NCBI RefSeq assembly: GCF_002113885.1
Contig: NW_018407609.1
Coordinates: 1,929 to 65,928, forward strand
DNA length: 64,000 bases
DNA from: Mizuhopecten yessoensis
Taxonomy: Eukaryota
Reading direction: 5' to 3'
Shown: one piece after another, positions 15,127 through 62,166 of the stretch
Layout: every line of letters begins with the position of its first letter
How positions within the stretch are numbered: the first letter of the stretch is position 1
The notes under the pieces: model-generated
Told to the model about the DNA's origin: nothing
The model's database searches: none
Seen by the model: the letters and a program-made list of their open reading frames with translations, nothing else
Position numbers and translations under genes: made by a program

Positions 15127-16290
15127 CACACAGAAGTATAAGTAATAATTATTTTTCAGTCTATTGGCATGCTTTTCTTTGCATTCGAAATGATACATGA
15201 AATACATATGAAAGGTGTTTAACGATAACATTCGCTTTTAGCCAAAGTATGTTTTTCTTTTAAAATGTTTCCTTGTGGCAAATTTGATTCAGTGTTCGGT
15301 AAAAGACAACTCGAATACACTTTACGGTGACCAGCAACAGCAGGTTTCATCAGAATTATTATCAAAACAAAGATTTTCTTAAAATGATTAATACTGTAGA
15401 GTTTCATATATTTTTTTTACCTCCTTTATTTAGAATCTTATAAATTTTTGTGCATAGTCTAATTTCTGTTCTTTTAGGATTGAATTATTTTCCCTCCTTT
15501 TTCATTAAAAAATAATGAAAATCGAATTTTCCCAACAGTGACATAAATGCATGTCTCCTTTCCGCTTCGGCAGTGGAACAAATTGGCGTGGTCTCATTTC
15601 TTGTGCGTTCCACAGACGACACAAATGACTTTTTTTCAGGAATATGGTCATTTTGAACAAGATAAGAAGCGTATTAAGCAAAATTGTACATGAATGCGTG
15701 TTTATCTGAAGGAGAAATACATTCTTAAGTTTTCCGGCCGAACCGCAGGTATTTTTTGTCAGTTCGATGCGCTCGTTGTCATGAGATAGGGATATAACTG
15801 TTACAAAATGAAGCTTGATAGAATGGTGGCGTGGAAGTATATAACGCATGAACACTTTCGGCGAAACGATACATCTTTCTTTTGGAGTATTTAGTTTTTT
15901 TTAACATTATTTTTTCGGAGGACTCGGGAGTGGCTACGTTTAAAGGCACATACATTTATAAAGTAGTGACCTCTGATGTGTTCATGGTAATATCAAAGTT
16001 TTAGAGGCTTAGGTCAACTTTCAGTAAACTGCCAACCCAGCGATTAACATCATTTAAACCCCTTACAAATTAGCTTAGTTAAAACTGTTAACCATCTCAT
16101 GTCCCTGTGTGCAAAAGAGGGATGTGTCCGTCCACTCCTGTGGTCCTTGAACAGATCCGGCAATACATGTATGTGGAACCACTTACTCTCTATCTTGTGG
16201 TGACGTCCTTTTCCTAACGTCGCAGTAGATTGCCTCCTGAAATTCATCAATAGCTCGCCACGATTTCCTGGGTTTGTCAAGTCTGTTCAT
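4977..16290 (-). CDS. SPO11: Meiotic recombination protein SPO11 (TopoVIA homolog), exons 1-12; terminal exon off-window
   Basis: Exons joined in frame with consistent phases: 16187-16290, 13352-13480, 10504-10592, 9819-9885, 9242-9350, 8299-8385, 7802-7838, 6538-6647, 6343-6442, 5732-5769, 5501-5577, 4977-5088 (1059 nt, 353 codons). Motifs: TKRDIYY (catalytic Tyr), LASSKGCVAG, Toprim VVEKDATF, GKGFPD, DADPHG and IEIMSIYKYGS. Exon 1 (MNRLDKPRKSWRAIDEFQEAI..., GTAAGT donor, matching phase) is the least certain assignment. Confidence 0.93.
6648..7801 (-). other. U12-type (minor spliceosome) AT-AC intron 7 of SPO11
   Basis: On the minus strand the intron starts ATATCCTTT and ends ...ACCTTGACATTCTTAC (branch point, then AC). 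These boundaries keep the 37-nt and 110-nt exons in frame. Confidence 0.88.
7065..7662. mobile_element. MITE/foldback element with ~180-bp terminal inverted repeats
   Basis: 7065-7247 is the near-perfect reverse complement of 7479-7662. There is no coding capacity. Confidence 0.85.
8528..9131 (+). mobile_element. Helentron/HINE-like non-autonomous element (3' truncated) with internal ~150-bp tandem units, in SPO11 intron 5
   Basis: Starts AAGAGGCCCATGGGCCTTAACGGTCACCTGA, the same type of head as the element at 41966. GCTGCATACAAAGTTTCATCAAACT recurs at ~8739, 8888 and 9041. It ends in an ACGC/ACGAC microsatellite. Confidence 0.7.
9415..9587. repeat. 20-bp minisatellite (TAGTATTTCAGTGTGTTACA), ~8 copies
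   Basis: Direct tandem periodicity of 20 bp in SPO11 intron 4. Confidence 0.9.
9932..10190. repeat. 72-bp minisatellite, ~3.5 copies
   Basis: CCACAGGGCCC...TAAGCAATG units recur every 72 bp (9940, 10012, 10084) in SPO11 intron 3. Confidence 0.9.
10967..13395 (-). repeat. 54-bp tandem array (45 units) made of the 3' ~44 nt of SPO11 exon 2 plus the donor GTAGGATTTC
   Basis: Minus-strand unit: ACAACATTGGTCTACAACAGTCGGACGTCCTGGGACAATATCAG|GTAGGATTTC. Donors run from 13351 to 10975, a span of 44x54 bp. Confidence 0.95.
14755..14830 (-). mobile_element. 3' end fragment of a LINE/SINE (stem-loop plus AAACTTG-type tail)
   Basis: The minus strand reads GGGTCGTAAGGCCCCCGGAATAAACTTGAATTGAAA. This resembles the 3' end of the LINE at 47219-47258 (GGGCCAATGGCCC...AATAAAACTTGAAACTTG). 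Confidence 0.5.
15035..15132. repeat. Compound (CAGA)n/(CA)n microsatellite
   Basis: Directly visible simple repeat. Confidence 0.95.
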
Positions 16291-18510
16291 CACGGAAGCT
16301 TGTCGTCTGCTACATAAAACGCCACCTAGCGGACCAAACTATCATTAATTATCTCCCTTATGGACTGCATAAAGTTAAAAAAATCTTTGATAACACACAA
16401 AACAAATTCCTTTAAACTGGTAATATACATTTATTTCCTGGTTAAACAAGTAAAACACAGTCGAGACTCAAGGGAAAAAAATCAGAACTCAAAGACAACA
16501 GCTGAAAACTAAAAGAGATTTAGCCGGTATACATCCAGAGAAGTAGCTTTCCTGCACCACGAACGCCACTTGATATGTCCGTTCCTTCAAATCAAGGAAA
16601 GTAGGAAGGCCAACGAAGAAAATATGGTTGACACAATTTGTATCAGTGCCAGACATCTACAGATAACATCGTACCTTGATGGACACAGTTATCTCTCTAG
16701 ACTAGTGGCACGGTTCAAAATATACACACTTTTGGAACTATTTAATTTGGAATTAACCAGTAGTTCTGTTGTAGGACGAAGAATAGTGATAAAGATATAT
16801 ATATATAGTGCCGTCGCTGGGGCGCGATCATTGGCTCTCCAGCCTGATGCTCTATCGCTGAGCTAAAGGGAAATTCCCTACAGCTGACGCTTTTAAGGCA
16901 ACCTAATAAATGCACATCTTTTACAGTTCTACTCCTCCAAATTTTGAAATTCATAAATTGAGGTGTCGAACGCACCTGCCCCTCGGTTTCTACGATAGAT
17001 AAGCCATTTTGGATTTCCAATTTTTTGCCACTAGCATCACCAATGAGTCATAGAAGGACGCAACAACTATTTGATGTAGTGTATTTTTTTTTTTTGGCAT
17101 ACTGTATCTATTTACAAATTTTACAAGTGCATCATATGTGTAGGCAATACGTTCATCTTTCAATCCAATCAGTGTATTGCATGTCCGTAGCCTGCGGACA
17201 GTAATATTGACGATCATCAAATTTAGATCGTAATGTACGGTAGAAACTGAACAAGACATAATTATATTCATTGTTCATTCAACATCAAAAAACACTTATT
17301 TTTAATGGATATAAGTACGCATTTTTTAATCACAAAAGTTGCTTTTGTATACGTATTACAAAAACATTAATATACAATGACTTTTTCAAAGATGATTATT
17401 TTTGTCTAGTAAGTATATTTGATACCTATTTGTACAGCTGGATAGACTGGAACAATCAGTGTAACGTGTCAACGGCAATAGCCAACCGCTGTGAGCGGTA
17501 ATTAACTCGTGACCTCTTTGCCAGGAGGAAGGAACACAGGGTACCAACTCCGGTACATGCTTTCTTTTCTAAGGCTGGTTGTATACCTTATAAGATGCTA
17601 ACAACGTCAACCTCGTGTGTCATGAGTGTAAAATAAAACTTGACTTGAAACTTGACCTATTTTGGACTAAGGTAAGAGATTTGACGCCGGGAGTCGATCC
17701 TGCACCTACAAGTAAACCACTGTAGAACGTCTAAGGGTCGTTGGTAATAGGTACCATTAAGAGATTTTCTATTTCATCGGATATTTACGAAAGGAGTGAA
17801 GTTGGTTTCATTCCAGCTTCAGGGCGAGTTCATAAATTTCATTTGAAATTTAATGCTTTTTCAATCCGATAACGAAGAAATGTTAATTATCTTAATTCAG
17901 AGGTCGCATTGAACTAACGACAAAAAAATAAATGAATAAAAAACAACAACGGTGTATTTATTGGATAACACGATAGCCATGTAATAGAGTAATTTTCCGT
18001 TGTTATATTTGGTTTTTCTATATAAGTTTGAGTTATAATAAAGCTATCCACAATGCTAGTTATTTTAATTATTTTTATTATATTTCTGTAAGAAGAACAA
18101 CCGGTCGCCCTCTGCATTACTAAAACTCCCATTAATGTTTTGGTGGAATTTTTTATCTGACTTATTTCTCTTCGCGCCGCTGTAAGCGAATCAGAAATCG
18201 CGTTACACATGATGTTTATAACTAACAGACGTTTAAAACCAGGATCTAGACATTTTTGTTATTAAAATGACAGTCAAAATACCAAACAAATGTTAAATTC
18301 GCCACAAATATTGTTTACAGTGTAAACGAAATAGAAACATCGACACACGCATGACTTTTAGAATACTTTCATTTTTCTGCGAAGGCATGAGGAAGATGGA
18401 TGGATCGGACGTCTTTGAAAATATCAGGATAATAAAACACTTGTGGCAGATTTTAATTGTGCGTAGGATAACGGTCGCCTTCTAGCTTCGAGCTAGAGGG
18501 AATTTACATT

Positions 18511-18587
18511 TAGCTCAGCGGTAGAGCGTCGATTAGGAAGTCTGGTTCGATTCCTGGTTGAAGCACACTATTATCTTTCCTGTTACA
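18511..18587 (+). mobile_element. tRNA-derived SINE-like relic
   Basis: A-box-like TAGCTCAGCGGTAGAGC and B-box-like GGTTCGATTCC, but the anticodon arm is collapsed and there is no acceptor stem. Confidence 0.55.
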
Positions 18588-18889
18588 CACCGTATCGCCT
18601 GGTTATTTTGGGCGATTACACGCCCCTGGAAAATAGTTCTAGCCTTAGGGCTGACAGCTTCCTTCCCATGATCTGTTTAGATTTTGTTATTCACGCTTGA
18701 TGTGTGTGTCTCTCAAAAAGAGCGTGCATATTCAAGAGAGGGTCGTACCAATAATTGATATACTTCCTCTTTGACCTAGGGAATGATCATACAAAAATAG
18801 GTTCAACCCAGTGCAGATCCATAAGGACACCAGATAAAATAGTTAAGCTGTGAAATAAGTATTAATATTTATTTTCAATCATTTCTCTT

Positions 18890-19010
18890 TTCTTTGACAA
18901 GAGGTGGCTAACTTTTACAAAAGCCTTAGACAAATCCATAACTAACACATCCATTTTCTTTGAGCTATCCAGCGTTTTGGTGATGTTATCAACAAATCCG
19001 AAAGTTGTGA
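18890..19010 (-). pseudogene. Degenerate LINE reverse transcriptase fragment
   Basis: Translates to FVDNITKTLDSSKKMDVLVMDLSKAFVKVSH, matching the RT D-x-SKAFD-x-V-x-H motif region. Confidence 0.7.
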
Positions 19011-21019
19011 TTCGCAAAGAATAGAATTTTCGTAAAAAACCACTTGTTTGAGAGGATATAAGATAACATGGCGACCGGAATGTGTTATGATGTAAGATAC
19101 CATGATAATTATGCTTCATAATTTTGCAACAAATTTGTGTCCAATTTTCGGTCTTTTTTAATATTGGAGCATTATGGGAGGTGTTCCTATCTTGGAGGAC
19201 TATGCCAGATAGCAATGATTAGTTCAAAACGTTTTCTTGTAGCTGTATAGAGAATATGAAAAACATAAACGAAAAAAAGGCATTTATTAGTAGTAATTAG
19301 TTGAAATATGGTAGGACAATCGGTCTTGATGATTTCGTCTCTGATGCAACCCAAGATAATGGGATGATGCACCTACACATGGGCAGTGATAAGCGACATA
19401 CAAGCTATCAGGTAAAGAGTATCAGAAAAAATGCTTTCGCGTAATAAATAATTAATAATATGATATTTTCAGGATTAATGAGTATCTGGTGGGAACTGGA
19501 GCTCATGAGTACCGCAAATTACACATGCTTGAAAGGACCATCCTTTTTGTAATAAAAGGATACCTTTATTTTTATTATCTTTTATATGACTACTTGTTGG
19601 CAATGTATCCAGCAACACAGTTGGGGACACCTGCGTCATGAATTTATTTATTTTCACCAGGAAGTGTTTGAAAATAGTCGTTTCTAAATTTGACAAACGC
19701 TTAAGATTTGTCAAGAGGTAATAAAAAGCTAGGGGAGGTTTAATTACTTAGACATTTTATGTGAGCCAAAGTTTGCGGTCGATCGAGTAAAGGATGTAAT
19801 ATGATTTGTTGTAACGTTAATGGATTTTGTTTGTTTCGTTATATCATATGATTGGCATTAAATACCATATAATTACGACTATGAAAGATCAAATTTTCTT
19901 TTCTAATATCAATGATTATATTTCTTTCAAGTCACTTATATCATATCCTTCATATGTCGAAGTTATATACTCGTTTCCCCGAGTAGGCTTCGGGTAAAGA
20001 ATGCGGTACTACTGCGATTTACTTGCTAGTCTTGCTATTACATCGTTTTTCGGACTTTACATGTAGGGTTTATTCGTTTATTCTCGATTCACGATTGCGA
20101 GGATGCTATTTCAATATTGAGGGAAATAATCGATGGAATATATATTTGCGGAAGAGTTGTATTCGCTCATGAGTTTCCTAGCGAATTAAGTTGATACATC
20201 GCGCTAATCAAAATGATTTACAATAACATATATTTGAGGTAAAATTTTAAACAGAAATATTGTAAAAGATCTTGAGACAAAAGGGACTCACAATATCGCT
20301 ATACGCTTTATAAAGCATTTCATTGTGGGACCATTATATCGATCAATCAACAAAACCAAATACATGCCTCGATATAAACAAGTCATATCAATATTACTCA
20401 AACATGCAAAACAAATTTAAACAGCAGGATTAGTTGTCTGGTTAATATGGGAATCGTACTCGACCATTTGAAATTGCTCACAATCTTAAGCTATACTATG
20501 CTTAACTACGGTTTGTGGGGTTCTTAATCTGCCCGCGCATGGATTTTATACAAACTTTGCAATTTTAATGGTGTAGTGAAATCACTTCGGAAACCGATAG
20601 TATTGTTTTAAAGTGTGTAAAGAAAATGCAGAAAGGGCCTGTATTGGTGTTTTTCCTGAAAAATTAGGAGGTACCCCGATATTTGATGTCATAAGTACAC
20701 ACAATCAGGATAGATTGTTGTAGATTGTTCACATTAGGATTGTGGAGACACTAAGCATTCCATTAATATGTATTTTGTATGTTTTAAGTAAGTGATATAA
20801 AACATCAACTGGCTTACCATGACCACACTCAATTAAAAATATCGACCAAACAAATCACACTTGAATATTCAAAGTCTATTTCTTATAGGCTTTCTTAGAT
20901 GTCTCTTCTTCGTAAGTATTTAAAAATAGTTTTAGGGTATTGTTAACATTAGTGAACATTTTTTATTTAAATTGATAACCTGGAACATAGTCTACCAGCC
21001 TGTCTTATATACCTACCCC

Positions 21020-21247
21020 ATCCTCCTCCTCCTCCTTCTCCTCCTTCTCCTCATCAATATATATTGTCATCGTCATAATCATCATCATACGCCATCTTCT
21101 TACACCATCATCATCATTATAATCATCCACAATACACCATCAGTATCGTCATTTACATATTCAGTCCGTCATCATAATCATATACCATCATCTTACATCA
21201 TCATCAACAACATATCAGCATCCTCTGCAATGTATGATGATGATCAT

Positions 21248-21279
<32 letters not shown>

Positions 21280-21352
21280 GCATCAACAATGTATGACAAT
21301 CATCAACATTATCTACAATCATCTTACATCATCATCAACAATATTTCATCAT

Positions 21353-21383
<31 letters not shown>

Positions 21384-21448
21384 AGCAGCATCAACAATGT
21401 ATGACAATCATCAACATTATCTACAATCTTACATCATCATCAACAAAT

Positions 21449-21482
<34 letters not shown>

Positions 21483-21490
21483 CCACCACA
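21020..21490. repeat. Degenerate CAT/CAG/CCT trinucleotide region with an internal duplication
   Basis: (CAT)n(CAG)n CATCAACAATGTATGACAATC occurs twice (~21243 and ~21346). It is present in duplication copy A only. Confidence 0.9.
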
Positions 21491-22276
21491 TTCTTATCAG
21501 ATGAACGCAGGTAATTACATCTTTTAATGACGTAACTCAGTACTCCAGTATATATGCAAATATCTCGTTGACTGTTTTGCTGCCTTTCAAGTTATCCTTC
21601 CAACTTGGCCCGTCTTGCTTATTTCATTTTTTATTTCTTATTGTCTTCTGACTACACTCTCCTTTCATCTTCATTAAGATTTATTTATATTGTCCTACAC
21701 TAGTCACTTATACTATACTACTATAGAATTCTTCTCAGTTTAAAACCTGTATACAGTATGTCTGAAAATTGTTAAGCAAGCTGGCAGAATATATAGCGGA
21801 ACATTTTACTTACACAGGTGACTTTGAGGTCTTTGGTGTGTGTCCCAGTCTAGCTAGTGCGCTAATTATTTTTATATTGCCCCCACAACATGGAATAAAA
21901 TTAAATGTTATGGAGCTTCAAAAGGAAGTAACATGCATGCATTTGATAAAATGCATGTCAGGCCCTGTCGAGCTGTTCTTTTTGCAAGATTCCGAATAAA
22001 ACTTTCTATTCAGCCATAGTATGAATAAGTTTCATAAATCCGTGCGTGGGCAGGGTCTATAGGAATTTTAACATAGCCACGAACACCACCTTTTTAGAAC
22101 ATTACTCATAATCCCTTTCTCTGTTTTGAGGGGGAAACTTCATTTGTGGGAATACCATTTAAAACACAAATGCATTGCCGACACAGCCATTAATCTCAAT
22201 ACATAATTTAAGTGTTTGGTAAATAGTCAAAAGTTCATCTTAAAATCTTCCTAATTTCTAATTTCTTCAAAATAGG

Positions 22277-22346
22277 TATAAAAGCAGCGATTTGTTAACA
22301 TATCAAGTAGAAGCTCGGAGGAGAGAGAGAGCGATCTAAGAGAAAG
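22277..22346 (+). promoter_or_regulatory. TATA box and non-coding exon 1 of BRICHOS gene copy A
   Basis: TATAAAA at 22277, and ~65 nt downstream the donor AAAG|GTAAGT. Conserved in copy B. Confidence 0.65.
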
Positions 22347-22545
22347 GTAAGTCTCTTGTTTCACCAAGGTCTTTTCTAACGTAGCTTAAAAACCAAGAGA
22401 CTCATTTTGTGCTGGAAAGGGAATATGAAAAACACCCAAATTCATTTATTACATTAATTTATTTATTTGAATTATGATTATCAATAACAATATTTCTAAT
22501 GAATGCTTAACACATATAATGTACTTTTCTGAATCTAGGTTGATC

Positions 22546-23667
22546 ATGCGCCTGTTGATCGTAGTAGCAGTTGGTCTATTGGCTGAAATAGGCCAAACAA
22601 CATCAGCAGACGACAGTCATGTCACTTTGGTATGCAGCAGTGCTGGAAACATGTAGAGTGTAATCCGTATCCTAAGTTGTTTTTTTAATATTTCATATCC
22701 TTAGCGTTTAGATATTTGTATATAAGGTCATTTAATTTTCTCGGTACTGATATCTTCTTTCTTTGATGGATATCGCCAGGTTTAAGGCCCTGCGATAAAT
22801 CCTACTTACAAAAATATCCAACATAGGAGGGTCCTCACATCTTTTTTCACATAGTATCTCCATTATTATATAGTCTCATTTTTATCATTAAAATAAGGAT
22901 TCATTTGCAGTTCCATGTAAAATATGGACTGTAAAACGATTTACGCTTTATTGAATTATTCTCAAGTAAATTGTAAGAATGTTATAGCAGAATGTGCTAT
23001 ACTAAAACAGAAGTTTCATCGTTTATATTTTGTAATATACTCGTTTATAAGTTCAATGTGCATTTTTTCGGATTTTCAGTTTAAAAGATTTAATTCGGCA
23101 AAAATTGGCTGCTTGAAATATCGTATCTTGAAACCCAGGAAAATTGACTTTATTAAAATATGGATATTCTCTTGCGGGATGTTACATTTCGTTTCGATAG
23201 TACCATATACGATTTCAAAAAGAAAAGAATTCAATAAATATGATTAAGCAATGAATGTTTTAACAAAATTTGTTATGGTCCTATAACAGATAATGATGTA
23301 ATATTAACGACAAACTGAATAAAGCCCGGCAGGGCTTTATAAATGTTTGAAATAAGAAGTGATAAAAGTGTGGTGAAAAACTTAACTTCATTTACTGTAA
23401 TGCGTGTTCATAAGAGTTGCTTTCTTATTCATTATGTATCTATTTACCTTTTTTATTTTTTCAAAAAACAAAAATTATTTGGAAACTGCTTATAGAATTT
23501 TGTCTCCGGAATTTTTCCTCGTGTAGTTCCTGTCTCAGAATATCAGTACAGCAGAGGGGGACGTGTTTGCTGTCAACATGGAAACGGATAAAACCGAAGG
23601 GAAGGACATTGTGCACTCAACTATGAATGGGAATGGTTCCCAGACGGTGGTTACAGACCATGCACTG
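22546..23667 (+). pseudogene. Partial duplicate (coding exons 2-3 only) of the BRICHOS precursor gene; possibly an alternative 5' cassette
   Basis: Exons 22546-22629 (MRLLIVVAVGLLAEIGQTTSADDSHVTL) and 23527-23667 (FLSQNISTAEG...TDHAL) have intact splice sites. No downstream exons of its own were found. Confidence 0.8.
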
Positions 23668-23879
23668 GTGAGTTGCATCAGTATATTCAGCTCACCTGTT
23701 TAAAAAATAGAATAATTGGGGGTTAGTAGGTGATGTGAGGGCATACATTGGTTTTGACTTCTTCGCAATGCCGGAACAACAATTCTATGATCGGAGTACT
23801 TTGGTTTTTACCTTTGTAGAGTCACATAGTTGTGTGTGTGTTTTTTCCAAATTGTGAATGCAACACTTATGTGATAAAA

Positions 23880-24030
23880 AAATTCTTATATTCGTGTCTA
23901 TGTCATATTGACTTAATTAAACTTGTTGAATAAATTGATTTGACACTCACCTAAAGGCTCGTGTCATATTAAATTATTGAACTCCTTTAATAAATTCAAT
24001 ATGACATGGACACTCATGTAAGATCCTCTA
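23880..24030. mobile_element. Short palindromic MITE-like hairpin
   Basis: TCTTATATTCGTGTCTATGTCATATTGA is an imperfect inverted repeat of TCAATATGACATGGACACTCATGTAAGA, centred near 23955. Confidence 0.6.
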
Positions 24031-24540
24031 CATATAACACTCAGATCAAAGACCTTGTAGAAAGTACTGATTCCTTTGTGCTGTACATGATTAACTTGTT
24101 CTCATTTCAACATTTGTTATAAAATTTAGAATTAAAGACTAATACAACTTATAAATATTGAATCACATACGCTCTGTATCAATATAAAATATAGAGCTAT
24201 TTAATTTCGTTCGACTATATAATACCAAGGCCTGTAAATAGCATAAGTACAATCAAATAAAGAAAACGAAAAACCTCCAAAATGTAATTTAAGAAAAATA
24301 CGAACAACTATGTTCCGCACGTGGGATTTCAATAACTGTTTGAAGAAAGACAACTCGAATGCACTAAGAGTAAAACGTAATTGACTAGTAGATCTCCGGC
24401 AGCTTTGGGTGAATTGTCAAGCCAACCGATAGTATCATTCAAAGTCCCTTTTTGCGGAATACGCTATTTGGAGAGTAGATGTGCCCAATCTCCAGTCAAA
24501 ATTACATGTGGTCCTTTAACTGATTTGTGAAACCACTCAC

Positions 24541-24644: not shown

Positions 24645-27600
24645 CACGGAAGCTTTTGTTGTCGTCTGCTACATCAAACGCCATTTAAAAAAAAAGGTTT
24701 TACGCACCTGCCTCTGTGTTTGTTTTCCAATTGTGTAATCACCGATGAGTCCTAGATGGACGAAACAGCTGTATGATGCAGTGTAATTCTTTTATTGCAT
24801 ACTGTATTTATTTTCCAAATTTAAAAAATGCATCACATGTGTGAGTGTTTGTGTGTGTGTGTGTGTTACTTTCATCTTTTTTTTTATCTAACCGGGTCTA
24901 TATACCTGCAGACTGTAAAACTTAAGATCGACGTAAAGTACGATAGAAACTGAACCAGACATAATTCTGTTAATTTATTTTTCAGCATCAAAGACGGTTA
25001 TTTTTTATGAAATAAGTAGGTATTTGTTAATTTCAAGTTGCGTTACTAATCACATAAAAAGAAGTTTAAAGAAAAATAGAAATTTTGAAAAGAAATCGAT
25101 TTATGAAATATATGTATGTCATATGCAATGACCTTATCAAAGATGATTACTTTTGTCTAGTAGTTATATTGGATACATATTTGCACAGCTGGATAGACCA
25201 GAACAATCAGTGTAACGTGTTAATAACAATAGCTACTTGCTGCCGGTGGGATTAACCTGTGAACTCTTTGCCAGTAGGCGGGAATACACTAGAGTCTCTG
25301 TCGTATGCTTTCTTTATGGGCCCTATATGTTGTAAACAAGGTTAACCTATTTTGGGACTAAGTTTAAAGACGACGCCGATAGTCTACCTCTATGCCTACA
25401 AATTAACTACTCTAGAACGTCTGGGGATCAATGGTAAGAGATAAAATTAAGAGATTTCCCATTTCATCAAATATTTACGAAACAGGTCAAGTTGTTTTCA
25501 TTCCAGCTCCGGGCGAGTTCATAAATCCCTTAAAGTGGATTTCATATAATTTTGTATCAGATAACTAAGAAATGTATCAATACACGCGAAAACTTTTTCG
25601 TTTTCTGATCATCCTCAAGTCTTCAATTGTCTTTGACGTCACAATGTTAGGACTATTGTCTTGATTCAGAGGTCACCATGACAAAGTAAAACAAAATGTG
25701 TTTTCATTGGATAACGCGGTAATCTTGTAATAAAGTTTGCGTTACAATGATATGATTTAGGATACTTTTCAAAAAAAAAAAAAAAATAACGTCAATATTA
25801 AGTTAATACTTCCCGTTGTTATACTTTTGTAAAAAATAATTTCTATGTAGGTTCGAGTTACGATAAAACCATCTACTTTGCAGTTTTTTTTATTTATCAA
25901 TATTATATTTCTGTTAGAGGACTAACACCCGGTGGATATTTATCGAGTTATAACCCTCTGCATTACTTACACCCCCTTTCACGTTTTGTTGGAAATCTTT
26001 ATCTGGCTAAAGTCGGCTCACACCAATGTAAGTCAATCAGAGTTCGCGTTACATAGGAGGTTTACAAGAACGTTTTAAACGAAGGCAACTAATAATTTCC
26101 TGAATTTAGACACTTATAAATACTGAAAGGCACCATTCTTTAATGAAACTGAATTATGTGGAAAGTTTGAAGTACATATTTTATATGCATAAGATAACGT
26201 TAGATATGATGTTTTGATGTAAAACGTACGAAGCGAAATACGCCGCCTGTCGCCATGTTAGGATGAGTGGTAAAGTACCGAATGGTACAAATATCACATT
26301 TACACAATGGCTTTTTTGATCGTCAGATAAAATCTCTCTAAGTATATGAAATTCACCATAAAAAGAGTTATTTCATTAACACCTTTTGCATCTTCCCTTA
26401 GTGCTTTTTGTAATCATTCGGTAGTCATTATTTCTTAACAGGAAGAACGTGTTCTTGTATATTTTCACCAGTTTCGTTCCTAACCCGTTTAATATTGTAT
26501 TACTGCTGCTTTACTGAGAATCTGTCAAAACCAGTACAAGTATTTGTGTAATAATTGTAAAACAAAATTGCTGAAACTGAAAAGTAAGTCTACCATAAAA
26601 CATCACTTAAGGCCAATCGCGCAAGAGATACTCTTGATTGGTAGCACAGCACTTTTAACAACTTAAACAGAATTGAAGTCATTCAAACATATGTGTTATT
26701 TATCTTTTATTGCCAAGATTTTGATAACCTTATACAAGTTACTGTCGGTTAGAGTTAAACTGTATTTTTGCGGCGTGTCATTCGTTCGCGATGTAGTTTA
26801 TCTGAGAGGTGTAGTTTGTAGGAAATGTAAATAAAAAAGAAAAGAAAACGGGAAAAGGTCATGCGATACTCTTCAAAGTATTATCTTTGCTGTGTAGGTT
26901 AAAAAAAACTAGTTTTATAGTCCTAGTCTAATTATTTATTTTCTCGTCACCGTGAGGGAACGAGTTGCTATTTCCTAAAGAAATACAGAAAAAATGTGTC
27001 TAGTTTAAGTTTTATTGCTGCTGCTATTGCACTGGTGCGCATTTCGGGAAGCCTCCTTGCTCGGTACATTTGTCATGCGTGAATATTGTCGCGTTGCCAA
27101 GATGAACCATGTACCCTTACAGAACATTTTCAAGTGAGCTTTTTTCCTACAATCTGACAGACTGTATCTGCTGAGAGCAACGAGCATGGCAGTCATACTA
27201 AAGGTACAAACTCTCTTCCTCCAAAGCAAAATAATTAGAGGTTGCAATCGTATCGTGGTTCTTTATATATCTACAGTCAGTCATGGTTTGCAAGTCCTAT
27301 AAAGGAGTCCATTTGGTTTTTGAGTACATTTATTAGATATACAGTTTTATTAAGTTTGTTTTATGGCGTTAGTCAGACACAAACAACTTGTCCTGCATCC
27401 TTCAGATGTGGGATACAAATAAAGACTGTTTTAGTGGGTTTCTTTGCAGTTGCAACGCTTTCTATGTTTTCCTGAGATTCCTGACGAATCATGTTTTGGA
27501 TCAAATGATTAAATACTTTCTTTTCGTTTGGTCTTTATCACAAGATTGTCTTGGTTTCTTAAACAGTCCGTTGCTTTTACCATTCAAATGTTTTCGGAAG

Positions 27601-27660
27601 ATATTGATAGTAAACTTATTTGTTCGGATAGCTTGTTATGGATGTGCTTTTTTAAATGCA

Positions 27661-27765
27661 GAAGGTTCAGTTATTGGGCCTTTCTTGTTTGTTATCTTTA
27701 TAAATGACCTATCAAGTTCGGTAGGTTTGGAAGCATTTTCATTCGCTGACGACAACAAAAGTGAA
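27661..27765 (+). pseudogene. CR1-like LINE RT fragment
   Basis: Translates to GSVIGPFLFVIFINDL...FSFADDNK (GS-x-LGP-x-LF and F/YADD motifs). Confidence 0.75.
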
Positions 27766-27768
27766 ATC

Positions 27769-28045
27769 AGTCAGTATCAGTGTAGAAGACTATTGAAGTG
27801 ACATCAGACAGTATCAATGTAGACGGTTATTTAAGTGACATCAGACAGTATCAATGTAGACGGTTATTTAAGTGAAATCAGACAGTATCAATGTAGACGG
27901 TTATTTAAGTGACATCAGTCAGTATCAGTGTAGACGGTTATTTAAGTGACATCAGTCAGTATCAGTGTAGAAGGTTATTTAAGTGACATCAGTCAGTATC
28001 AGTGTAGAAGATTATTTAAGAGACATCAGACAGTATCAGCGTCAG
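27769..28045. repeat. 37-bp minisatellite, ~7 copies
   Basis: Unit GTGACATCAGACAGTATCAATGTAGACGGTTATTTAA, immediately after the RT fragment. Confidence 0.9.
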
Positions 28046-31000
28046 AGATACTTATCACTAGAGGAGGGTGGAACTACATCATATTTCGTAGATTCCCTTT
28101 TTGTTTTCGTACACAGTAGAATCTGCGTTTGCCTTTGTTTTAGTTCGGAAGTATAGACTAGGAATTTAATAAGCGAAATATGATATTTTGATTATAAATA
28201 GGATGCGCTCCCAGTGTTGATGTAAGCAATGTTTATGTGTTTTTTTGCAACATACCTTCTGATATTTGCAAGATGTTATAACACAAACAAAGATACCAGC
28301 AACCTGTAATTGTTTTTGTATCAGTTTCAGGTACAGTCAAACACTTTTAACAGCAAAATACCGTTTCATAGCCTGTATACGCTTTTTTGGGGGACTTCAT
28401 ACCCTCATACCATGATTTTTTTTATTTTTATCGACGAGAAAGTTTATGATGAGGATCGTTTCATTATTTATTACAAACGCTTGAGATTTGTCACGAGATG
28501 ATAAAAAGTAAGAGCGTTTGTAGGAATCATAAATCAAGTATGTTCCGGAACTTGCGATTATATGATATGTTATAAAGTCAATGATTGAACTTTTTTTGAA
28601 AATAACTATTGTTGTTAATCCATATTATATAATTGGCCTGCATTACCTCCTAATTACAATTCTGAAAACTGAAATTATGATTTCTACACGAAATTACGTA
28701 GTCACCAATATTAGCACATTTCCAATTGTTTATTAGGAATATCCCTCATATTTTACTTGTTACTCGATGAGACTGAGGTTCAACGACAAAATATCTTACC
28801 TCTTAATCTCATTTATTAATTCACGATTGTTTCAATTGTTTCAACATTGATAGTATTTATGCATGCGATTTCTACAAATTGTTATGCTCGGGTCGATTTG
28901 TCCTAGCCAGATATTGCATGCAGTTTTTTAATGAAATGGTTAAGGTTCGTATTAACGTAAAGTGTTCCAACGCGCTGTGCTCTATCTCAAAAGAAAAGAT
29001 TTTATTCATCATTTTCTGACTTGGGGTTTCTTGGCCTTATACCACAGAAAAGCATAATTTATACAAAAGAAATTCATTTTGGCTTCGTTTTGATAGACCT
29101 CCTAATTATAAACAGACAGTGAATTTAAAACAGAAAAGAATAAGCAACGACCTCACAAAGGAAGATCGAGAACAGGAAAAACTGTTATGGGCAGAGGTCA
29201 TAGAATAACACGCGGGCAAAACGCTTTAGGTGATTACACGTACAAAGTTCGAGGCCCGCCATGGGCAAGTTAGGGTAAAAAAAACTAAGAAGACTACAGT
29301 CTAGAAGAACCATGTATATTGTAGATAATTTTACCGCATATGACAAATACAAATGTTTATACACTAACGCTGACGAACTTCGAATTAAATGTCTTATCAG
29401 ATAGTGAGATTAAAGGACTGTGCCCCTCACATAATTGGCATTACTGAAGTTATACCTTAAATAAAAAAATATAACATCTTTCCGTCTGAATTAACCATGG
29501 ATGAGATAGGGGAGTACACATTGTTTTAATAAGGAGAACATTTAAGCCTATGGGCATATATCACTATATAAGAGCCTGGTGAGGCATATTGACTTCCTAA
29601 TTATAGTCTGGTCACCGTACAAAAGGAAATACATTGTAAGTGGATAAATTAAAGAAGTTCAATTAAGGGTCCTAAAACAAACACCAGGTCCAAAGCAAGT
29701 ATCTCAGTTATCCGGAACGTCTAAAAATCTTGAAACCGCCCACATTATAGTATAGTCGACATAGAGGTGTCATGATCGAAATATTTAAATAACACAATAC
29801 ACTTATATAAATATATTATCTTTCATCGTTACTAACATTAACAACTATAGCTAAGGATAGTGACGTGAATACGGATAGTTTACAGGGGAAGTTAGAAGCG
29901 AGTCGGGGAAATGCAGTGTAAAAATATGGTACATTCAGGAATTCGGTACATTGCGGTCAAACCAAAGTCTTCTGTTGCGTCATCGTTATTACACTTTTAG
30001 GTTGAACGTTATTTACAGACTATTTCAAGAAAAGTATATACATGTATGTAAGTAGGATCGCACATATACAAGCTGCATTATAATGCTAATATAAAATATA
30101 CTCTATGATAATCATACAAGACATGCTGTAAGTTGTTTGATTTAAAATGTTCTTATTGCCTAAAATAGCTGGCGACCTTATTTTCTTTGTAAGTATATAT
30201 AGTGGATAAACTAAATCTAACAGAATTTTCTTTTCGTCTGGGTTTAATATGTAAAAATAAACTTTGTCCACTTACGGTTCTTCCCCATGCGTGAAAGCGT
30301 TCTGGGAAATTAAGGCCGCGTACTGTCTTCAAAAACATGATAGTAAACCCTACGGTTTCTGTAATTATAACAGAAATATACGAAATATTTTATCTTTACA
30401 AGACGTCACTCTCTTAGAATGGTTCAATATGAACGGTTCATTCTATTCTCTGCGTACATTTTCAGTTTTGAGTTTAAATGAAGCGACCGCAGAATAAGTG
30501 GTCGTGTGTTCCACCTATGCAGCATACACTATTGTTTTTACACAACTACACGTTCAATATCATTTTTATTTGGAAATCTAACCAGACAATAGCAGTAAAC
30601 GGCAAAATTGCAGTAAAAAAAAAACCATTCAGAATGGCGCTCTGTGTTATTATCAAGCGTGACGTCATAAGAACTTGGCGTCAAAAAATAGTGGACAAAT
30701 AGTGGACAAATATGGACAACTAGTGGACAAATGTGGACAAATGATGACAAAATAAGGACAAAATACAATACAGAATCAGCAGTATTTGCATATTTTTACA
30801 TCAAAAAAGAATATATCGTATTTGTTTTTATATTTTGAATAAGTTTAGTCTCAAAATATATTCTTTCATATTAATTGATTTATCTATCTATCTATTGATA
30901 TAACCTTAGTTTCAAACATCTTAAACAAATCATGTTTAAATTACAACCATTGAGTATTATAAATAAAATGTATAGAAAACATTCCGATGATAGCATGAAG

Positions 31001-31490
31001 GATTCTATACAAAAAGTAACGTTCGACGACAGTGACTTCATCTAAAGCTTCCCGTACGACTCTCACTAGCTCTGACATTGACCACACACTCTTCATAACC
31101 GAATCACAAGACAAGCTTATGCAGTCTATCCACTTTCCTCCACCAAAACAATACAACAGCAAGCAGACATGTACAAGAAGGAACGACAAGACATATCAAA
31201 CAACAAGGAGCGCAATAGGAAACAACATCGCCAACTATTTATTGCTTTTAAATAAGTTTTATGCATAGGATTATTAAGGAAATTGAAATTACATGATTAA
31301 AAAAAGGACAGAAAAAATAGGAAAAGAAAAGAAAAGAGAAAAAAAACCCGAAACAGCGGCGAGAGAATCCTGGAGAGAATACCAGAAATCAGAAGCAAAA
31401 TGCTGAAACAGGGGAGTTGATTCCGTCATTAACACAAAATTGATGACGTCACACGCAATACACGCTAATGAAAACAGGGGGAGATAATTN

Positions 31491-31527
<37 letters not shown>

Positions 31528-32765
31528 CGTAGGTTAACGGGGTTGCTATTGCTAAGGCCGATTTTCTGGATAAGAAAACTATCCTTCCAATTGATCGAAT
31601 AGGAATTGCACATGTAAGGAGTATCTGGTTTGAACAGGGCTCATGAGAACAAAAAGGAGACATTTTTATATTCTCTTTTATAGGACTACTTGTTGGCGAC
31701 ACCACACTTGGGGACACATGCGTCATGTTTTTTTAATTTTCACCAGGAAGTTTTTGAAAAGGATCGTTTCTAAATTCGACAAACACTTCAGATTTGTCAA
31801 GAGGTCATTAAAAGTTAGGGGAGGTTTAAACACTTATATATTTTATGTGAGCCGCTGTTTGCGGCTGATAGAGTAAATCATGTAATATATTGTAATGTCA
31901 TAGTGTATCATTGGCAGTAAATACCTTATAATTACCACTATGAAAAAAGTAAAAGTTTTTTTCTAATAACAATGATTAGATACCTCATATGTCGAAGTTA
32001 TATAGTTGTTTCTCGATAAGGTTTCGGTTAAAAATGCGGTACTACTTCGATTCACTTAGGTCTTGCTATTACATTGTTTCTCGGACTTTGTCGGTAGGGT
32101 TTACTTGTTTATTCTCGAATTCATGATTACGAGGATGCTACTTTAATATTGAGAGAAATAATCGACGGAATATACATTTGCGGAAGATTTTTATTCGCTA
32201 ATGAGTTTCCTAGCGAATTAAGTTGAACATTTATATCTCGCGAAAACAAAATGATTTACAGAAAAAATAAATATGAGATAAAGTTTTAAAACGAAATATT
32301 GCAAAAGACCTTTAGACAAGAGGGGCTCACAAAACCGTTATACGCCTTATAAAGCATTTCATTGTGGCACTACTATATCGATCAATCAATAAAGCCAAAT
32401 ACATGCCTCGATATAAATAAAACATATCAAGATGACCCAAACATGCAAAAAAATAAAAATAGCGGGTTAACTTGAAATTATTTATTATATATATTTTAAG
32501 TTGTCTGGTTTATATGGGAACTGTTCTTTAATCGACATTGAAAACTGTTCACGATCTTCAGCTATAATATGCTTAACGACGGTTAACATTTTTAGAACAT
32601 GACTCATCACCCAATCTTCTGTATTGAGGGAAAAACATAATTTCTGGAAATACCACGTAGAACACACATTTATTGCCGACACAGCCATAAATCTCAATGT
32701 GTAGACTCAAGTGTTTGGTAAATAGTCAAAAAAAATTATCTTGAATTATTCCTGGTCAAAATAAG

Positions 32766-32830
32766 TATAAAATAAAGCGTTTTGTTAACATATCAAGTAG
32801 AAGCTCGGAAGAGAGAGATCTTCGACAAAG
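32766..32830 (+). promoter_or_regulatory. TATA box and non-coding exon 1 of BRICHOS gene copy B
   Basis: TATAAAA at 32766 and donor AAAG|GTAAGT at 32830/32831. Confidence 0.65.
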
Positions 32831-33034
32831 GTAAGTCTCTTGTTTTATCAAGATAATTTTTAATATTGCTTAGAAACCAAGACATTCATTTTGTTCTGAA
32901 AGGGTATAACTCAAACTCAATTATTATATTAATCAAATAATTTATTCATTTCAATTATGATTATAAATGACTTATTGCAATATTTCTAATTACAGTAAAC
33001 ACATATAATGTACTTTACTTAATCTAGGTTAACC

Positions 33035-36000
33035 ATGCGCCTGTTGATCGTAGTAGCCGTAGGTCTGTTGGCCGTAATAGGTCAAACAACATCAGCAGAT
33101 GACGGTCATGTCACTTTGGTATGTAGCAGTGCTCAAACTATGTAGAGTGTAATCCGTATCCTATGTTGTTGTTTTTTGTTTTTTGTTTTTTTGTTTAAAA
33201 ATATTTCATATCCTTAGCGTTTAGATATTTCTATATAAGGTTATTTGATTTTCTCGGTACTGATATCTTCTTTCTTTGTTGGATATCGCCAGGTTTAAGG
33301 CCGTGCAATAAATCCTACTAACAAAAATATCCGACATAGGAGGGTCCTCACACCTATTTTCACATAGTATCTCCATTATTATATAGTATCATTTTTATCA
33401 TTAAAATAAGGATTCACTTGCAGTTCCATGTAAAATATGGGCTGTAAAACGATTTAGGATTCATTGAATTATTCTCAAGTAAACTGTAAGAATGTCATAG
33501 CAGAATATATTATACTGAAAGAGAACTTTCATCGTTTATATTTTGTAATATACTCATTTATAAGTTCGATGGGCATTTTTTTTTTTGGATTTTCAGTTTA
33601 TCTCAGTAATAAGAATTGAAAGATTTAATTCGGCAAAAATTGGCTGCTTGAAATATTGTATCTTGAAACCCGGGAAAATTGACTTTATTAAAATATGGAT
33701 ATTCTCTTGCGGGATGTTACATTTCGTTTCGATGGTACCATATACGATTTCAAAAAGAAAAGAATTCAATAAATATGATTAAGCAATGAATGTTTTAACA
33801 AAATTTGTTATGGTCCTATAACACATAATGATGTCATATTAACGACAAACTGAATAAAGTCCGGCAGGGCTTTATAAATGTATGAAATATGAAGTGATAA
33901 AAGTGTGGTGAAAAACTTAACTTCATTTACTGTAATGCGTGTTCATAAGAGTTGCTTTCTTATTCATTATGTATCTGTTTACCTTTTTTATTTTTTCAAA
34001 AAACAAAAATTATTTTGAAACTGCTTATAGAATTTTGTCTCCGGAATTTTTCCTCGTGTAGTTCCTGTCTCAAAATATCAGTACAGCAGAGGGGGACGTG
34101 TTTGCTGTCAACATGGAAACGGATAAAACCGAAGGGAAGGACATTGTGCACTCAACTATGAATGGGAATGGTTCCCAGACGGTGGTTACAGACCATGCAC
34201 TGGTGAGTTGCATCAGTATATTCAGCTCGCCTGTTTGAAATATAGAATGCTTGGCGGTTAGTATGTGATGTGAGGGCATACATTAGTTTTGACTTCTTCG
34301 CTAAAATACACCCACCAGGGTTAGGTTTCTGTTTAAGGCATAATCTATAAACAGTTGTCTTTCTGTCATCTGCAATCGAAATTAATTACAGGACATTTAG
34401 TGATATTTTAAAGTAATTATCCAGCGTTTAATACGACACCCCGTTTGTAGTACATGGAAAATCTATTCCAGTAAACGTTATGTAAAAGGCATCGCATGAT
34501 ATGGAAATGGAAAAAATATATCTTTTACATAACGTTAGCTGAAATAGTGATTTTTTAAATTGCCTTGTGTGTTTAATAAATCATGCTTAATAGAATGAAT
34601 TGAGAAGAATAGAGTAGAACGCGTTTCAAGTTGGAATAATTGATGCCTATTAATTTGCGTTGTTCTTTTGCAAAAGATATTCTTAAACGTTAATAAATAT
34701 ACATGAAGAAATGACTTACTTGCCTGTTATTTTCATCCTATTGAGTTATTTTGTATTCTAGCAGGGCAAATGTTCGCGGTTTATATACAGCAAACTATTG
34801 TGTGTATTACATTTTGCAGAACTTCATTCAATATATTCTTTATTATATTAGCCTTATACATTTTGCTTACCGAGTTATTAAATTAACCGTACAAGTCACA
34901 AATTATTTTCCTATTTAACAAAAAAGAGCAATATGCAATAAAGCGTCCTTTTTTTGTTAATATTGTCCAGATAGAAGCATCAGTAGGTGTGGTAAGCTTC
35001 AGTTAACTAAGTGCCCTGTCTTACAAGGAATCCTAGATCCGACCCCGAATGAATGTTTTAGCAAATGACATAATAGAATAATATATTTCACTGTTTCTTT
35101 GAATTTTTCTTTCTTCTAAGAATATGCGAGTTGTGATACCAGACTCAGAATCCGAGGATTGTCACTTTTTGGAACTTGACGAAGAAGAAAAGACAGAACC
35201 GTCACTTGAAGAGGACACAGAAGGCGTAGCCAAGGTAAGACATCTTTGATTTTCATTTTCATTCTTTTTATAGTTCTTTATATGTACTACATCATTTCGC
35301 TTAAACATTTTTCCAGTATAACAGATAAGTATAAAGGGTAAGCCTAATCCCTCCATTTCGGGAAAATGTTTGGACCATAATTTTCAAATATTTTACATAT
35401 TGTAATAACATTTGTAGAAAACTGGCGGTGTGGGACTTTTTTGAGCTTTGACTGATATACTGGTGAATATATGTTACCATTTTCATCGGGATAGGGGTAT
35501 ACTTATTTGACTAAGCTGAAGGAAAACATATCGATTATATTTTTTGAAATTATATAATAACATCCTAAATATCTTCTTTATTAAAAGTGATCGCAAACTT
35601 GTATTTTTCATTGGAACAAAAAAATTGAAATGAGTAGAGGATATCACTGTTTTTTATGCCCTGTCTTTTACTATCAAGATTCTTTGTAATGAATCTACCG
35701 ACTTCATTTCTCAACATATTGCATAAACAATTACACAAAGGTCAAATCTTAGTATATATGCCTCGCAGGAGTTCATATTTCAGGGTCTCGGAGGAGTCAA
35801 CGCCAATATAACTGTTGCTATTTATAGTTCAACCATAAGACCAATGGGGCGTTCATGTCTTACAGACGCTTTCTATTTTAATGAATAACAAATGGTTAAA
35901 TAATTTTATATTGTTCATTAAGTATCCACAAGTTGAATTTTATTGCTATTTTCGAGAAAAAGAAAAAAATGGATTTGTTTATTAGTTTTTGTCGTCATAA

Positions 36001-62143: not shown

Positions 62144-62166
<23 letters not shown>

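What the first reader, a model, noticed from the sequence alone, without database searches (positions are those of the whole stretch)
15290..34301. Duplication of a divergent promoter region interleaves the 5' ends of SPO11 and the BRICHOS peptide gene
Seen: the order is SPO11 exon 1a (<-), BRICHOS promoter and exons 1-3 copy A (->), SPO11 exon 1b (<-), full BRICHOS copy B (->). Both breakpoints lie in introns, so each gene stays intact but gains a second, distal 5' end with intact ATG, frame and donors. Inference: copy A exon 3 (phase 0) can splice to exon 4 at 35121, and exon 1b (phase 2) can splice to SPO11 exon 2. This would give alternative promoters for both genes and mutually antisense overlapping transcription between a meiotic gene and an immune gene.
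Basis: partly seen in the sequence, partly recalled or inferred. Interest (0 to 1): 0.74.

Follow-up and report, generated by a model that had tools for sequence, protein, structure and literature searches.

The report
Scallop-specific duplication of two gene starts
In the Yesso scallop, a stretch of DNA holding the starts of two back-to-back genes (the meiosis gene SPO11 and a secreted cysteine-rich peptide gene) was copied in tandem, leaving each gene intact plus a spare start; the spare peptide-gene start is weakly transcribed, and I found no evidence that the spare SPO11 start is used.

Summary
Copy A (16172-23766) and copy B (24526-34301) are collinear and lie in one gap-free stretch. The order is SPO11 exon 1a (-), peptide-gene promoter and exons 1-3 copy A (+), SPO11 exon 1b (-), full peptide gene copy B (+).

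It is not a haplotype mis-join:
- Identity is only 65-92% over most of the unit.
- Each copy carries its own kb-scale insertions.
- The assembly holds exactly two copies.

Pecten maximus and Ylistrum balloti have the same head-to-head gene pair with one copy of each cassette. The duplication is therefore specific to the Mizuhopecten lineage. A 600-bp tract over exon 3 is 98-99% identical, which points to gene conversion.

The functional reading is only partly supported:
- NCBI's M. yessoensis SPO11 model uses exon 1a.
- Exon 1b had no RNA in four runs, but there was no positive control. Its changes fall on a motif conserved in scallops.
- In one RNA library, an exon 2 like copy A is spliced to exon 3 at roughly 1/1000 of the total exon 3 depth.
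- Splicing exon 3A to the next acceptor (exon 2B) would give a premature stop.

The BRICHOS label could not be confirmed. This is an ordinary partial tandem duplication with an unusual layout.

The parts
13352..13480 (-). SPO11 exon 2 (the acceptor both exon 1 copies would use)
   Evidence: Acceptor tttaag|ACCTGAG and donor CAG|GTAGGA. Its translation matches residues 36-78 of the NCBI M. yessoensis SPO11-like protein P0116.
16187..16290 (-). SPO11 exon 1a, proximal; coding part, 34 codons + 2 nt, donor GTAAGT
   Evidence: Identical to the N-terminus of P0116, so this is the exon used in the annotated model.
16301..16325 (-). Conserved element GGTGGCGTTTTATGTAGCAGACGAC upstream of the exon 1a ATG (putative core promoter or 5'UTR)
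   Evidence: Conserved in Pecten maximus and Ylistrum balloti.
16172..23766 (.). Duplication unit, copy A (7.6 kb). Its own insertions lie at 16325-17035, 18222-19553 and 20514-22087.
22277..22346 (+). Peptide gene copy A: TATAAAA box and non-coding exon 1A (ends 22346, donor GTAAGT)
   Evidence: The proximal promoter blocks are shared with copy B and P. maximus.
22539..22629 (+). Peptide gene exon 2A (7 nt UTR + signal peptide MRLLIVVAVGLLAEIGQTTSADDSHVTL)
   Evidence: Contigs of RNA run X1 lie on it at >=95% identity, and a GT..AG joint links 22629 to 23527.
23527..23667 (+). Peptide gene exon 3A (47 codons, phase 0, donor GTGAGT); one synonymous difference from 3B, at 23538
23092..23693 (.). 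Tract 97.7-99.3% identical to copy B (3' half of intron 2 plus exon 3): gene conversion or a later exchange
   Evidence: Heterogeneity chi-square p = 2e-18; longest exact run 155 nt.
23772..24040 (.). Palindromic MITE-like repeat inserted at the right edge of copy A
   Evidence: more than 1000 first-look candidates in the genome, matching on both strands.
24041..24525 (.). Unique junction DNA between the copies, with a weak remnant of SPO11 intron 1 at 24326-24365
24541..24644 (-). SPO11 exon 1b, distal spare copy (intact ATG, 34 codons + 2 nt, donor GTGAGT)
   Evidence: 15/104 nt and 9/35 aa differ from exon 1a. No RNA depth in four runs.
24661..24684 (-). Copy of the conserved SPO11 upstream element, with GG->AA at its 5' end
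24526..34301 (.). Duplication unit, copy B (9.8 kb). Its own 5.6-kb insertion at 26068-31651 holds a reverse-transcriptase-like ORF.
32766..38143 (+). Full peptide gene, copy B: TATA 32766-32772; exon 1B ends 32830; exon 2B 33028-33118; 3B 34062-34202; exon 4 35121-35234; exon 5 36810-36999; exon 6 37929-38143 (RRKR followed by a 50-aa Cys-rich cationic peptide)
   Evidence: The exon 3->4 junction is seen in RNA as loose ends.
19614..19726 (.). Intergenic block also found in P. maximus; its twin in copy B lies at 31703-31815
   Evidence: 67-68% identity to the P. maximus intergenic region.

Best explanation
A tandem segmental duplication arose in the Mizuhopecten lineage, after its split from Pecten and Ylistrum. 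It copied the segment running from SPO11 intron 1 to intron 3 of the head-to-head neighbouring gene, which encodes a secreted peptide precursor.

Each gene keeps one complete copy driven by its proximal cassette: SPO11 by exon 1a, the peptide gene by promoter B. The two distal cassettes (peptide-gene promoter and exons 1A-3A, and SPO11 exon 1b) sit as spare 5' ends in what is effectively the intergenic space.

Since then the copies have diverged by 8-35% and have each acquired their own transposon insertions. They have been partly re-homogenised by gene conversion over exon 3.

Cassette A of the peptide gene still fires weakly and its exon 2 is spliced to exon 3. Its transcripts must skip exons 2B and 3B to be productive, so most are probably non-productive or minor. 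SPO11 exon 1b is most likely a slowly decaying relic.

Shown: the structure, its lineage specificity, the use of exon 1a in the annotated model, the 2A-like->3 splice, and the conversion tract. Inferred: that the distal cassettes contribute little functional mRNA.
For: Structure and divergence. Only two copies in the assembly, in one N-free stretch.

Independent repeat insertions in each copy.

P. maximus (L001) and Y. balloti (L002) hold the same head-to-head pair with a single SPO11 exon 1 and single peptide-gene exons 2-4. Exons 1a and 1b share derived residues (C23, R28, T29, S30) against both outgroups.

The NCBI M. yessoensis SPO11-like protein P0116 starts with exon 1a, and its 90% cluster has one member.

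RNA run X1:
- Summed contig depth on exon 3 is about 2-3 x 10^5, against about 200 on the exon 2A bin.
- One GT..AG joint links 22629 to 23527.
- Contigs clipped at the exon 3 acceptor carry copy B's exon 2.
- The letters after 23667 equal the start of exon 4.
- Depth on exon 1b is zero in all four runs.

Sequence change:
- Exon 1b carries 8 derived changes against 4 in exon 1a. These include I14N and A20E in the motif WRAI..FQ.AI, which is conserved in all three scallops.
- dN/dS for exon 1a versus 1b is 0.74, not different from neutral.
- A 3A->2B splice gives a stop after 24 codons.
Against: - Peptide exon 2 shows dN/dS of 0.10 between copies A and B (6 synonymous and 2 non-synonymous changes; Fisher p = 0.005). 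On the A branch alone, only about 2 of about 6 changes are non-synonymous. By hand, binomial p is about 0.05 against the neutral expectation from the site counts. This hints that exon 2A has been translated.
- Copy A keeps every promoter block shared with P. maximus.
- The RNA test of exon 1b had no positive control. The three raw-read runs do not express the peptide gene either, their tissue is unknown, and SPO11 itself could not be checked.
- Only one informative RNA library was laid, and its depths are summed contig depths, which are a poor measure of level.
- The derived-change count of 8 against 4 is not significant.
Confidence: 0.6

Rival explanations
1. Both distal cassettes are working alternative promoters or first exons (3A->4 and 1b->2), giving each gene a second 5' end and causing mutual antisense transcription across about 11 kb.
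For: - All signals are intact: ATGs, frames and donors.
- The conserved SPO11 upstream element is kept in copy B, and the conserved promoter blocks and TATA box are kept in copy A.
- An exon 2 like copy A is spliced to exon 3 in X1.
- dN/dS for exon 2 is 0.10.
Against: - No RNA lies over exon 1b, and no 1b isoform is on record.
- Exon 1b's changes hit the conserved N-terminal motif, and the GG of the upstream element is lost.
- Copy A-like RNA is about 1000 times lower than the total.
- 3A->4 needs two good exons to be skipped, otherwise a premature stop follows.
Confidence: 0.1
2. Only the peptide gene gained a working second promoter. Cassette A drives a minor or condition-specific mRNA that encodes the same precursor with a slightly different signal peptide (E14, S24). 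SPO11 exon 1b is dead.
For: - The GT..AG joint 22629->23527 and copy A-like contigs on exon 2.
- An exact-match contig over intron 1A at depth 3.
- Synonymous-biased divergence of exon 2.
- Promoter blocks are kept.
- Gene conversion keeps exon 3A and its donor identical to 3B.
Against: - The copy A-like contig differs from reference copy A at 3 of 66 letters. Its exon 1 end differs at 3 of 16 letters from both 1A and 1B. It may therefore come from a variant allele or an unassembled paralogue rather than this cassette.
- A 1.57-kb insertion sits about 190 bp upstream of the TATA box of copy A.
- The 3A->2B problem applies.
- The continuation of copy A-type transcripts beyond exon 3 was not seen.
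Confidence: 0.27
3. It is an assembly artefact: two haplotypes of one locus were joined in tandem.
For: The assembly is fragmented (82,659 contigs), and scallops are highly heterozygous (general knowledge, not tested here).
Against: - Identity is 65-92% over most of the unit, with kb-scale private insertions.
- Exons 1a and 1b differ at 15 of 104 nt.
- The junction is continuous sequence without N.
- There is no further copy elsewhere in the assembly.
- Four runs from 2025, all from one sample (S6), hold 66-72% of the sampled words of 22200-24800.
- X1 holds an exact 183-nt contig of copy A's intron 1 alongside copy B-type exon 2.
Confidence: 0.02

Closest known systems
Partial tandem (segmental) duplications that duplicate first exons and promoters, as in gene clusters with tandemly duplicated alternative first exons (UGT1A and clustered protocadherins; from general knowledge)
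   Same: A tandem copy of a promoter plus 5' exon(s) lies upstream of a shared set of downstream exons. Each copy keeps its own donor and, in principle, can splice to the common exons.
   Different: - Here there are only two copies.
- The unit spans the 5' ends of two different head-to-head genes, so both gain a spare start at once.
- The peptide-gene cassette holds three exons, including internal ones with acceptors. This makes read-through splicing non-productive unless exons 2B and 3B are skipped.
- Use of the distal copies is not demonstrated.
Conserved head-to-head gene pairs / bidirectional promoters (for example PMC3403606, listed, not read)
   Same: SPO11 and the peptide gene are head-to-head in three scallop genera.
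   Different: The spacing between the ATGs is 6.3-7.4 kb in the unduplicated species. That is well beyond the roughly 1 kb usually taken to define a bidirectional promoter (general knowledge). The tools gave no sign of a shared promoter.
BRICHOS-AMP precursors of polychaetes (arenicins, alvinellacin, capitellacin, nicomicins; PMC9756803)
   Same: The precursor has a signal peptide, a middle region with two spaced Cys, a dibasic RRKR site and a C-terminal Cys-rich cationic peptide.
   Different: PMC9756803 says BRICHOS-AMPs have been found only in polychaetes. No BRICHOS match was obtained here. The joined protein was not searched or folded.

Membership tests
SPO11 / TopoVI-A (gene on the minus strand) | TP6A_N domain (PF04406) with the catalytic-tyrosine region | tested here: met
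   the exon at window 9242-9355 (-) scores 44.4 bits (cut-off 26). The exon peptides match NCBI 'meiotic recombination protein SPO11-like, partial [Mizuhopecten yessoensis]' P0116, which carries PF04406 and PF21180.
SPO11 / TopoVI-A | Exon 1a or 1b is the N-terminus of the expressed protein | tested here: inconclusive
   Exon 1a equals the N-terminus of P0116. Exon 1b is in no protein on record and has no RNA depth in four runs, but none of those runs could be checked for SPO11 expression.
BRICHOS domain proteins (PF04089) | Match to the Pfam BRICHOS profile | tested here: not met
   - The six-frame genome search with PF04089 found nothing.
- Exons 3, 4 and 5 scanned one by one gave no hit at E <= 1.
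- The 193-aa product of the Y. balloti orthologue has no Pfam hit on record.
BRICHOS domain proteins (PF04089) | BRICHOS fold | not tested
   Folding needs the joined exons, and that step was left out. PDB sequence searches with exons 3 and 5 found nothing. The Atlas feature search on exon 5 was uninformative.
Tandem segmental duplication (not an allelic artefact) | Two collinear copies in one continuous sequence, diverged beyond allelic level, absent from outgroups | tested here: met
Alternative promoter / alternative first exon | Transcripts that start at the distal cassette and join the common downstream exons | tested here: inconclusive
   a 2A-like->3 splice is seen at low depth in one library, and exon 3->4 is seen but cannot be assigned to a copy. 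Nothing was seen for exon 1b. No TSS data are available.

The most novel reading that the evidence does not exclude
Both spare cassettes are in use. SPO11 would have a germline first exon 1b whose 11-kb intron contains an active promoter of an extremely highly expressed peptide gene. That gene's distal promoter would in turn transcribe antisense through SPO11 exon 1b. Transcriptional interference would then couple expression of a meiotic gene and a putative defence gene in one scallop lineage.
Probability: 0.07. Interest if true: 0.6.

Novelty: new member of a known kind. Interest (0 to 1): 0.3.

Why it matters
It is a well-dated natural example of what happens when a tandem duplication has its breakpoints inside two head-to-head genes. 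Neither gene is broken, and both acquire a spare promoter-plus-first-exon cassette. Two outgroup scallop species show the unduplicated state. The locus could therefore serve as a small model for three questions: the early fate of duplicated 5' ends (decay, gene conversion or co-option as alternative promoters), splicing choice when a cassette carries internal exons, and promoter interference. It changes no current view of SPO11 or of peptide-gene biology unless the distal cassettes prove to be used.

Tried and rejected
- The repeat finder on 10-40 kb was swamped by the 54-bp array. I replaced it with scripted BLAST.
- PF04089 against the genome in six frames found nothing. Pfam by exon found nothing. 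PDB sequence searches of exons 3 and 5 found nothing. The Atlas feature search of exon 5 gave only scores of 0.75.
- Word searches with exon 3 and with the open frame around exon 2A found no candidates. A full-length peptide precursor could not be reached, because no stop-free reference is long enough and the joined model was not to be searched.
- The single representative-library search went to SPO11. It gave no self-hit, but led via P0013 to the scallop orthologues.
- The look-up of encoding contigs for the M. yessoensis SPO11 protein returned nothing, because records of the window's own genome are left out. The NCBI gene ranges at this locus could not be read.
- The exon 1 end seen in X1 was searched in the genome and the window. 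There was no exact copy, so a third assembled paralogue is rejected.
- I tested whether the junction DNA 24041-24525 continues the homology. Only a 40-nt remnant of SPO11 intron 1 was found.
- The three raw-read RNA runs (X10, X15, X13) showed only repeat-derived partial matches, so they say nothing about either gene.
Full report
**Observation**

A scripted self-BLAST of the window shows one collinear pair of segments:
- 16172-16324 / 24526-24683 (85%)
- 17036-17883 / 24738-25575 (65%)
- 17994-18221 / 25810-26067 (68%)
- 19554-20513 / 31652-32584 (76%)
- 22088-23766 / 32586-34301 (87%)

The two units (A 7.6 kb, B 9.8 kb) are separated by 759 bp. No run of N lies between them; the only Ns in the window are single letters at 7755 and 31490.

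**Gene parts**

SPO11, minus strand:
- Exon 2 begins at 13480, behind the acceptor tttaag.
- Exon 1a runs 16290->16187 and exon 1b runs 24644->24541.
- Each exon 1 has an ATG, 34 codons plus 2 nt, and a GT donor.

Peptide gene, plus strand:
- Both copies have a TATAAAA box and a non-coding exon 1.
- Exon 2 encodes a 28-codon signal peptide. Exon 3 has 47 codons in phase 0.
- Only copy B continues into exons 4 (35121-35234), 5 (36810-36999) and 6 (37929-38143).
- Exon 6 carries RRKR followed by a 50-residue Cys-rich cationic peptide.

**Identity of the genes and the genome**

PF04406 (TP6A_N) hits an exon at window 9242-9355 on the minus strand. A search of the representative library with that exon's open frame, followed by a word search from the oyster-like hit P0013, found P0116. 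NCBI names it 'meiotic recombination protein SPO11-like, partial [Mizuhopecten yessoensis]'. Its first 78 residues are exactly exon 1a plus exon 2 of this window. The window is therefore Yesso scallop, and the annotated SPO11 uses exon 1a. The 90% cluster of P0116 has one member, so no 1b isoform is on record.

The 'BRICHOS' label could not be confirmed:
- PF04089 found nothing in the genome in six frames, and nothing exon by exon.
- PDB sequence searches with exons 3 and 5 found nothing.
- The 193-aa product of the Ylistrum balloti orthologue has no Pfam hit on record.

The joined protein was neither searched nor folded, so a weak full-length match or a BRICHOS fold is not excluded. A review states that BRICHOS-AMPs are known only from polychaetes (PMC9756803).

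**Not an assembly artefact**

- Most of the unit is 65-92% identical, and exons 1a and 1b differ at 15 of 104 nt.
- Each copy has private kb-scale insertions: A at 16325-17035, 18222-19553 and 20514-22087; B at 26068-31651. Both carry reverse-transcriptase-like ORFs, at 18862-19215 in A and 27388-27801 in B.
- The whole 988-Mb assembly holds exactly these two copies.
- Four runs from 2025, all from one sample, hold 66-72% of the sampled words of 22200-24800.
- RNA run X1 holds an exact 183-nt contig of copy A's intron 1 together with copy B-type exon 2.

**Age and origin**

The loci of Pecten maximus (L001) and Ylistrum balloti (L002) were fetched through their SPO11 proteins. Both show the same head-to-head neighbour upstream of SPO11 and a KH-domain gene downstream.

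- tblastn finds one SPO11 exon 1 and one each of peptide-gene exons 2, 3 and 4 (plus exon 5 in Y. balloti) in each locus. The ATG-to-ATG spacing is 7.4 and 6.3 kb.
- The pairing of the two genes is therefore old, but it is not a compact bidirectional promoter. The duplication is specific to the Mizuhopecten lineage.
- Exons 1a and 1b share derived residues against both outgroups. Non-coding DNA aligns between A and B over kilobases. Between scallop genera it aligns only at the exons, their near flanks and one roughly 115-nt intergenic block.
- The right edge of copy A abuts a MITE-like repeat at 23772-24040.

**Uneven divergence**

JC distances between the copies:

| Segment | JC distance |
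|---|---|
| Promoter | 0.21 |
| Intron 1 | 0.25 |
| Exon 2 | 0.12 |
| 5' half of intron 2 | 0.08 |
| 3' half of intron 2 | 0.023 |
| Exon 3 | 0.007 |

- The heterogeneity is highly significant (chi-square p = 2e-18), and the longest exact run is 155 nt.
- A tract of about 600 bp (23092-23693) has been homogenised, most simply by gene conversion. This keeps exon 3A and its donor identical to 3B regardless of function.
- At the single difference in exon 3 (23538), copy A has the ancestral base.

**Constraint**

Peptide exon 2:
- The copies differ at 6 synonymous and 2 non-synonymous sites (dN/dS 0.10, Fisher p = 0.005).
- Polarised with the outgroups, copy A carries 4 derived changes and copy B carries 1.
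- On the A branch about 2 of 6 changes are non-synonymous. By hand, binomial p is about 0.05 against the neutral expectation from the site counts. This is a hint, not proof, that exon 2A has been translated.
- Copy A keeps all the promoter blocks shared with P. maximus, but has a 1.57-kb insertion about 190 bp upstream of its TATA box.

SPO11 exon 1:
- dN/dS between 1a and 1b is 0.74, not different from neutral.
- Exon 1b has 8 derived changes against 4 in exon 1a. These include I14N and A20E inside the motif WRAI..FQ.AI, which is conserved in all three scallops.
- A 25-nt element upstream of the ATG is conserved across the three genera. It is kept in both copies, with GG->AA in copy B.

**RNA**

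One call was allowed, so I laid 22000-25200.

Run X1 (contigs of a metatranscriptomic RNA library):
- Summed contig depth on exon 3 is about 2-3 x 10^5.
- The bin over exon 2A has depth of about 200.
- One contig joins 22629 to 23527 across a GT..AG intron (depth 228).
- Contigs clipped at the exon 3 acceptor carry copy B's exon 2.
- Seven contigs continue after 23667 with the first letters of exon 4.
- An exact contig covers 22329-22511 (the end of exon 1A plus intron 1A) at depth 3.

The contig on the 5' part of exon 2A has 3 mismatches in 66 letters; copy B would give 8. It continues upstream into an exon 1 end that differs at 3 of 16 letters from both 1A and 1B. That sequence is not in the assembly. 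It is therefore a copy A-like third haplotype: a divergent allele or an unassembled paralogue.

The three raw-read runs had no reads on any exon of either gene. Exon 1b had zero depth in all four runs. Because no run could be shown to express SPO11, this is absence of evidence only.

**Splicing logic**

Read in the phase left by exon 3A, exon 2B gives a stop after 24 codons. The default read-through product of promoter A is therefore a transcript with a premature stop. Including 3B alone would be in frame. For SPO11 the model is simpler, because exon 1a has no acceptor, so 1b->2 is geometrically plausible. It simply lacks evidence.

**Verdict**

The spare cassettes are intact on paper, and the peptide-gene cassette is weakly alive.
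- The working genes use the proximal cassettes. Nothing yet shows that either distal cassette makes a meaningful product or that antisense interference occurs.
- The kind of event, a partial tandem duplication that creates spare first exons, is well known. The twist is that one event did this to two head-to-head genes at once.

Noticed in passing
window 10859-13351: A 54-bp tandem array of about 45 copies repeats the 3' end of SPO11 exon 2 together with its GT donor. The scan already noted it as s1-519455.
   Followed up: no
window 23498-23711 (and its twin in copy B): In run X1, a 202-million-letter metatranscriptomic RNA library, summed contig depth on exon 3 of the peptide gene is 2-3 x 10^5. 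The gene is among the most abundant transcripts there. Three other RNA-seq runs of the species show none at all.
   Followed up: partly
window 22331-22602: X1 holds a spliced exon1-exon2 contig that matches neither reference copy. Exon 2 is 3/66 off copy A, and the exon 1 end GGGATCTTAGATAAAG is 3/16 off both copies. It has no match in the assembly. It is either a divergent allele or an unassembled third copy.
   Followed up: partly
window 23538: At the only A/B difference in exon 3, X1 shows no other letter at >=5% although copy B-type transcripts dominate. Copy B in that sample probably carries the ancestral G, and the reference A would then be a recent variant.
   Followed up: no
window 23244-23349, 23772-24040, 16762-16930, 24738-24789: Short interspersed or MITE-like repeats with hundreds to thousands of genome copies. 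Some attract partial RNA reads from elsewhere.
   Followed up: partly
window 16301-16325 and 24661-24684; L001 about 9955-9985; L002 about 9945-9975: A 25-nt element (GGTGGCGYTKTAYGWAGCAGACGAC) about 15-35 nt upstream of the SPO11 ATG is conserved across three scallop genera, while everything further upstream is unalignable. It is a candidate core promoter of SPO11.
   Followed up: no
L002 265-3709 (Ylistrum balloti), L001 1-2601 (Pecten maximus): The orthologous peptide-gene models are short (193 aa, and 149 aa cut by the locus end). The Y. balloti model ends just after exon 5, so the Cys-rich last exon may be unannotated or lie beyond the fetched DNA. No match to exon 6 was found within the loci.
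   Followed up: no
window 1-4500 and 62144-64000: Two further long tandem arrays: a period of about 112 nt at 78-88% identity, and a period of 75 nt at 98-99.6% identity.
   Followed up: no
window 31490: A single N lies inside a homopolymer run in the copy B-only insertion. It was left as it is.
   Followed up: no
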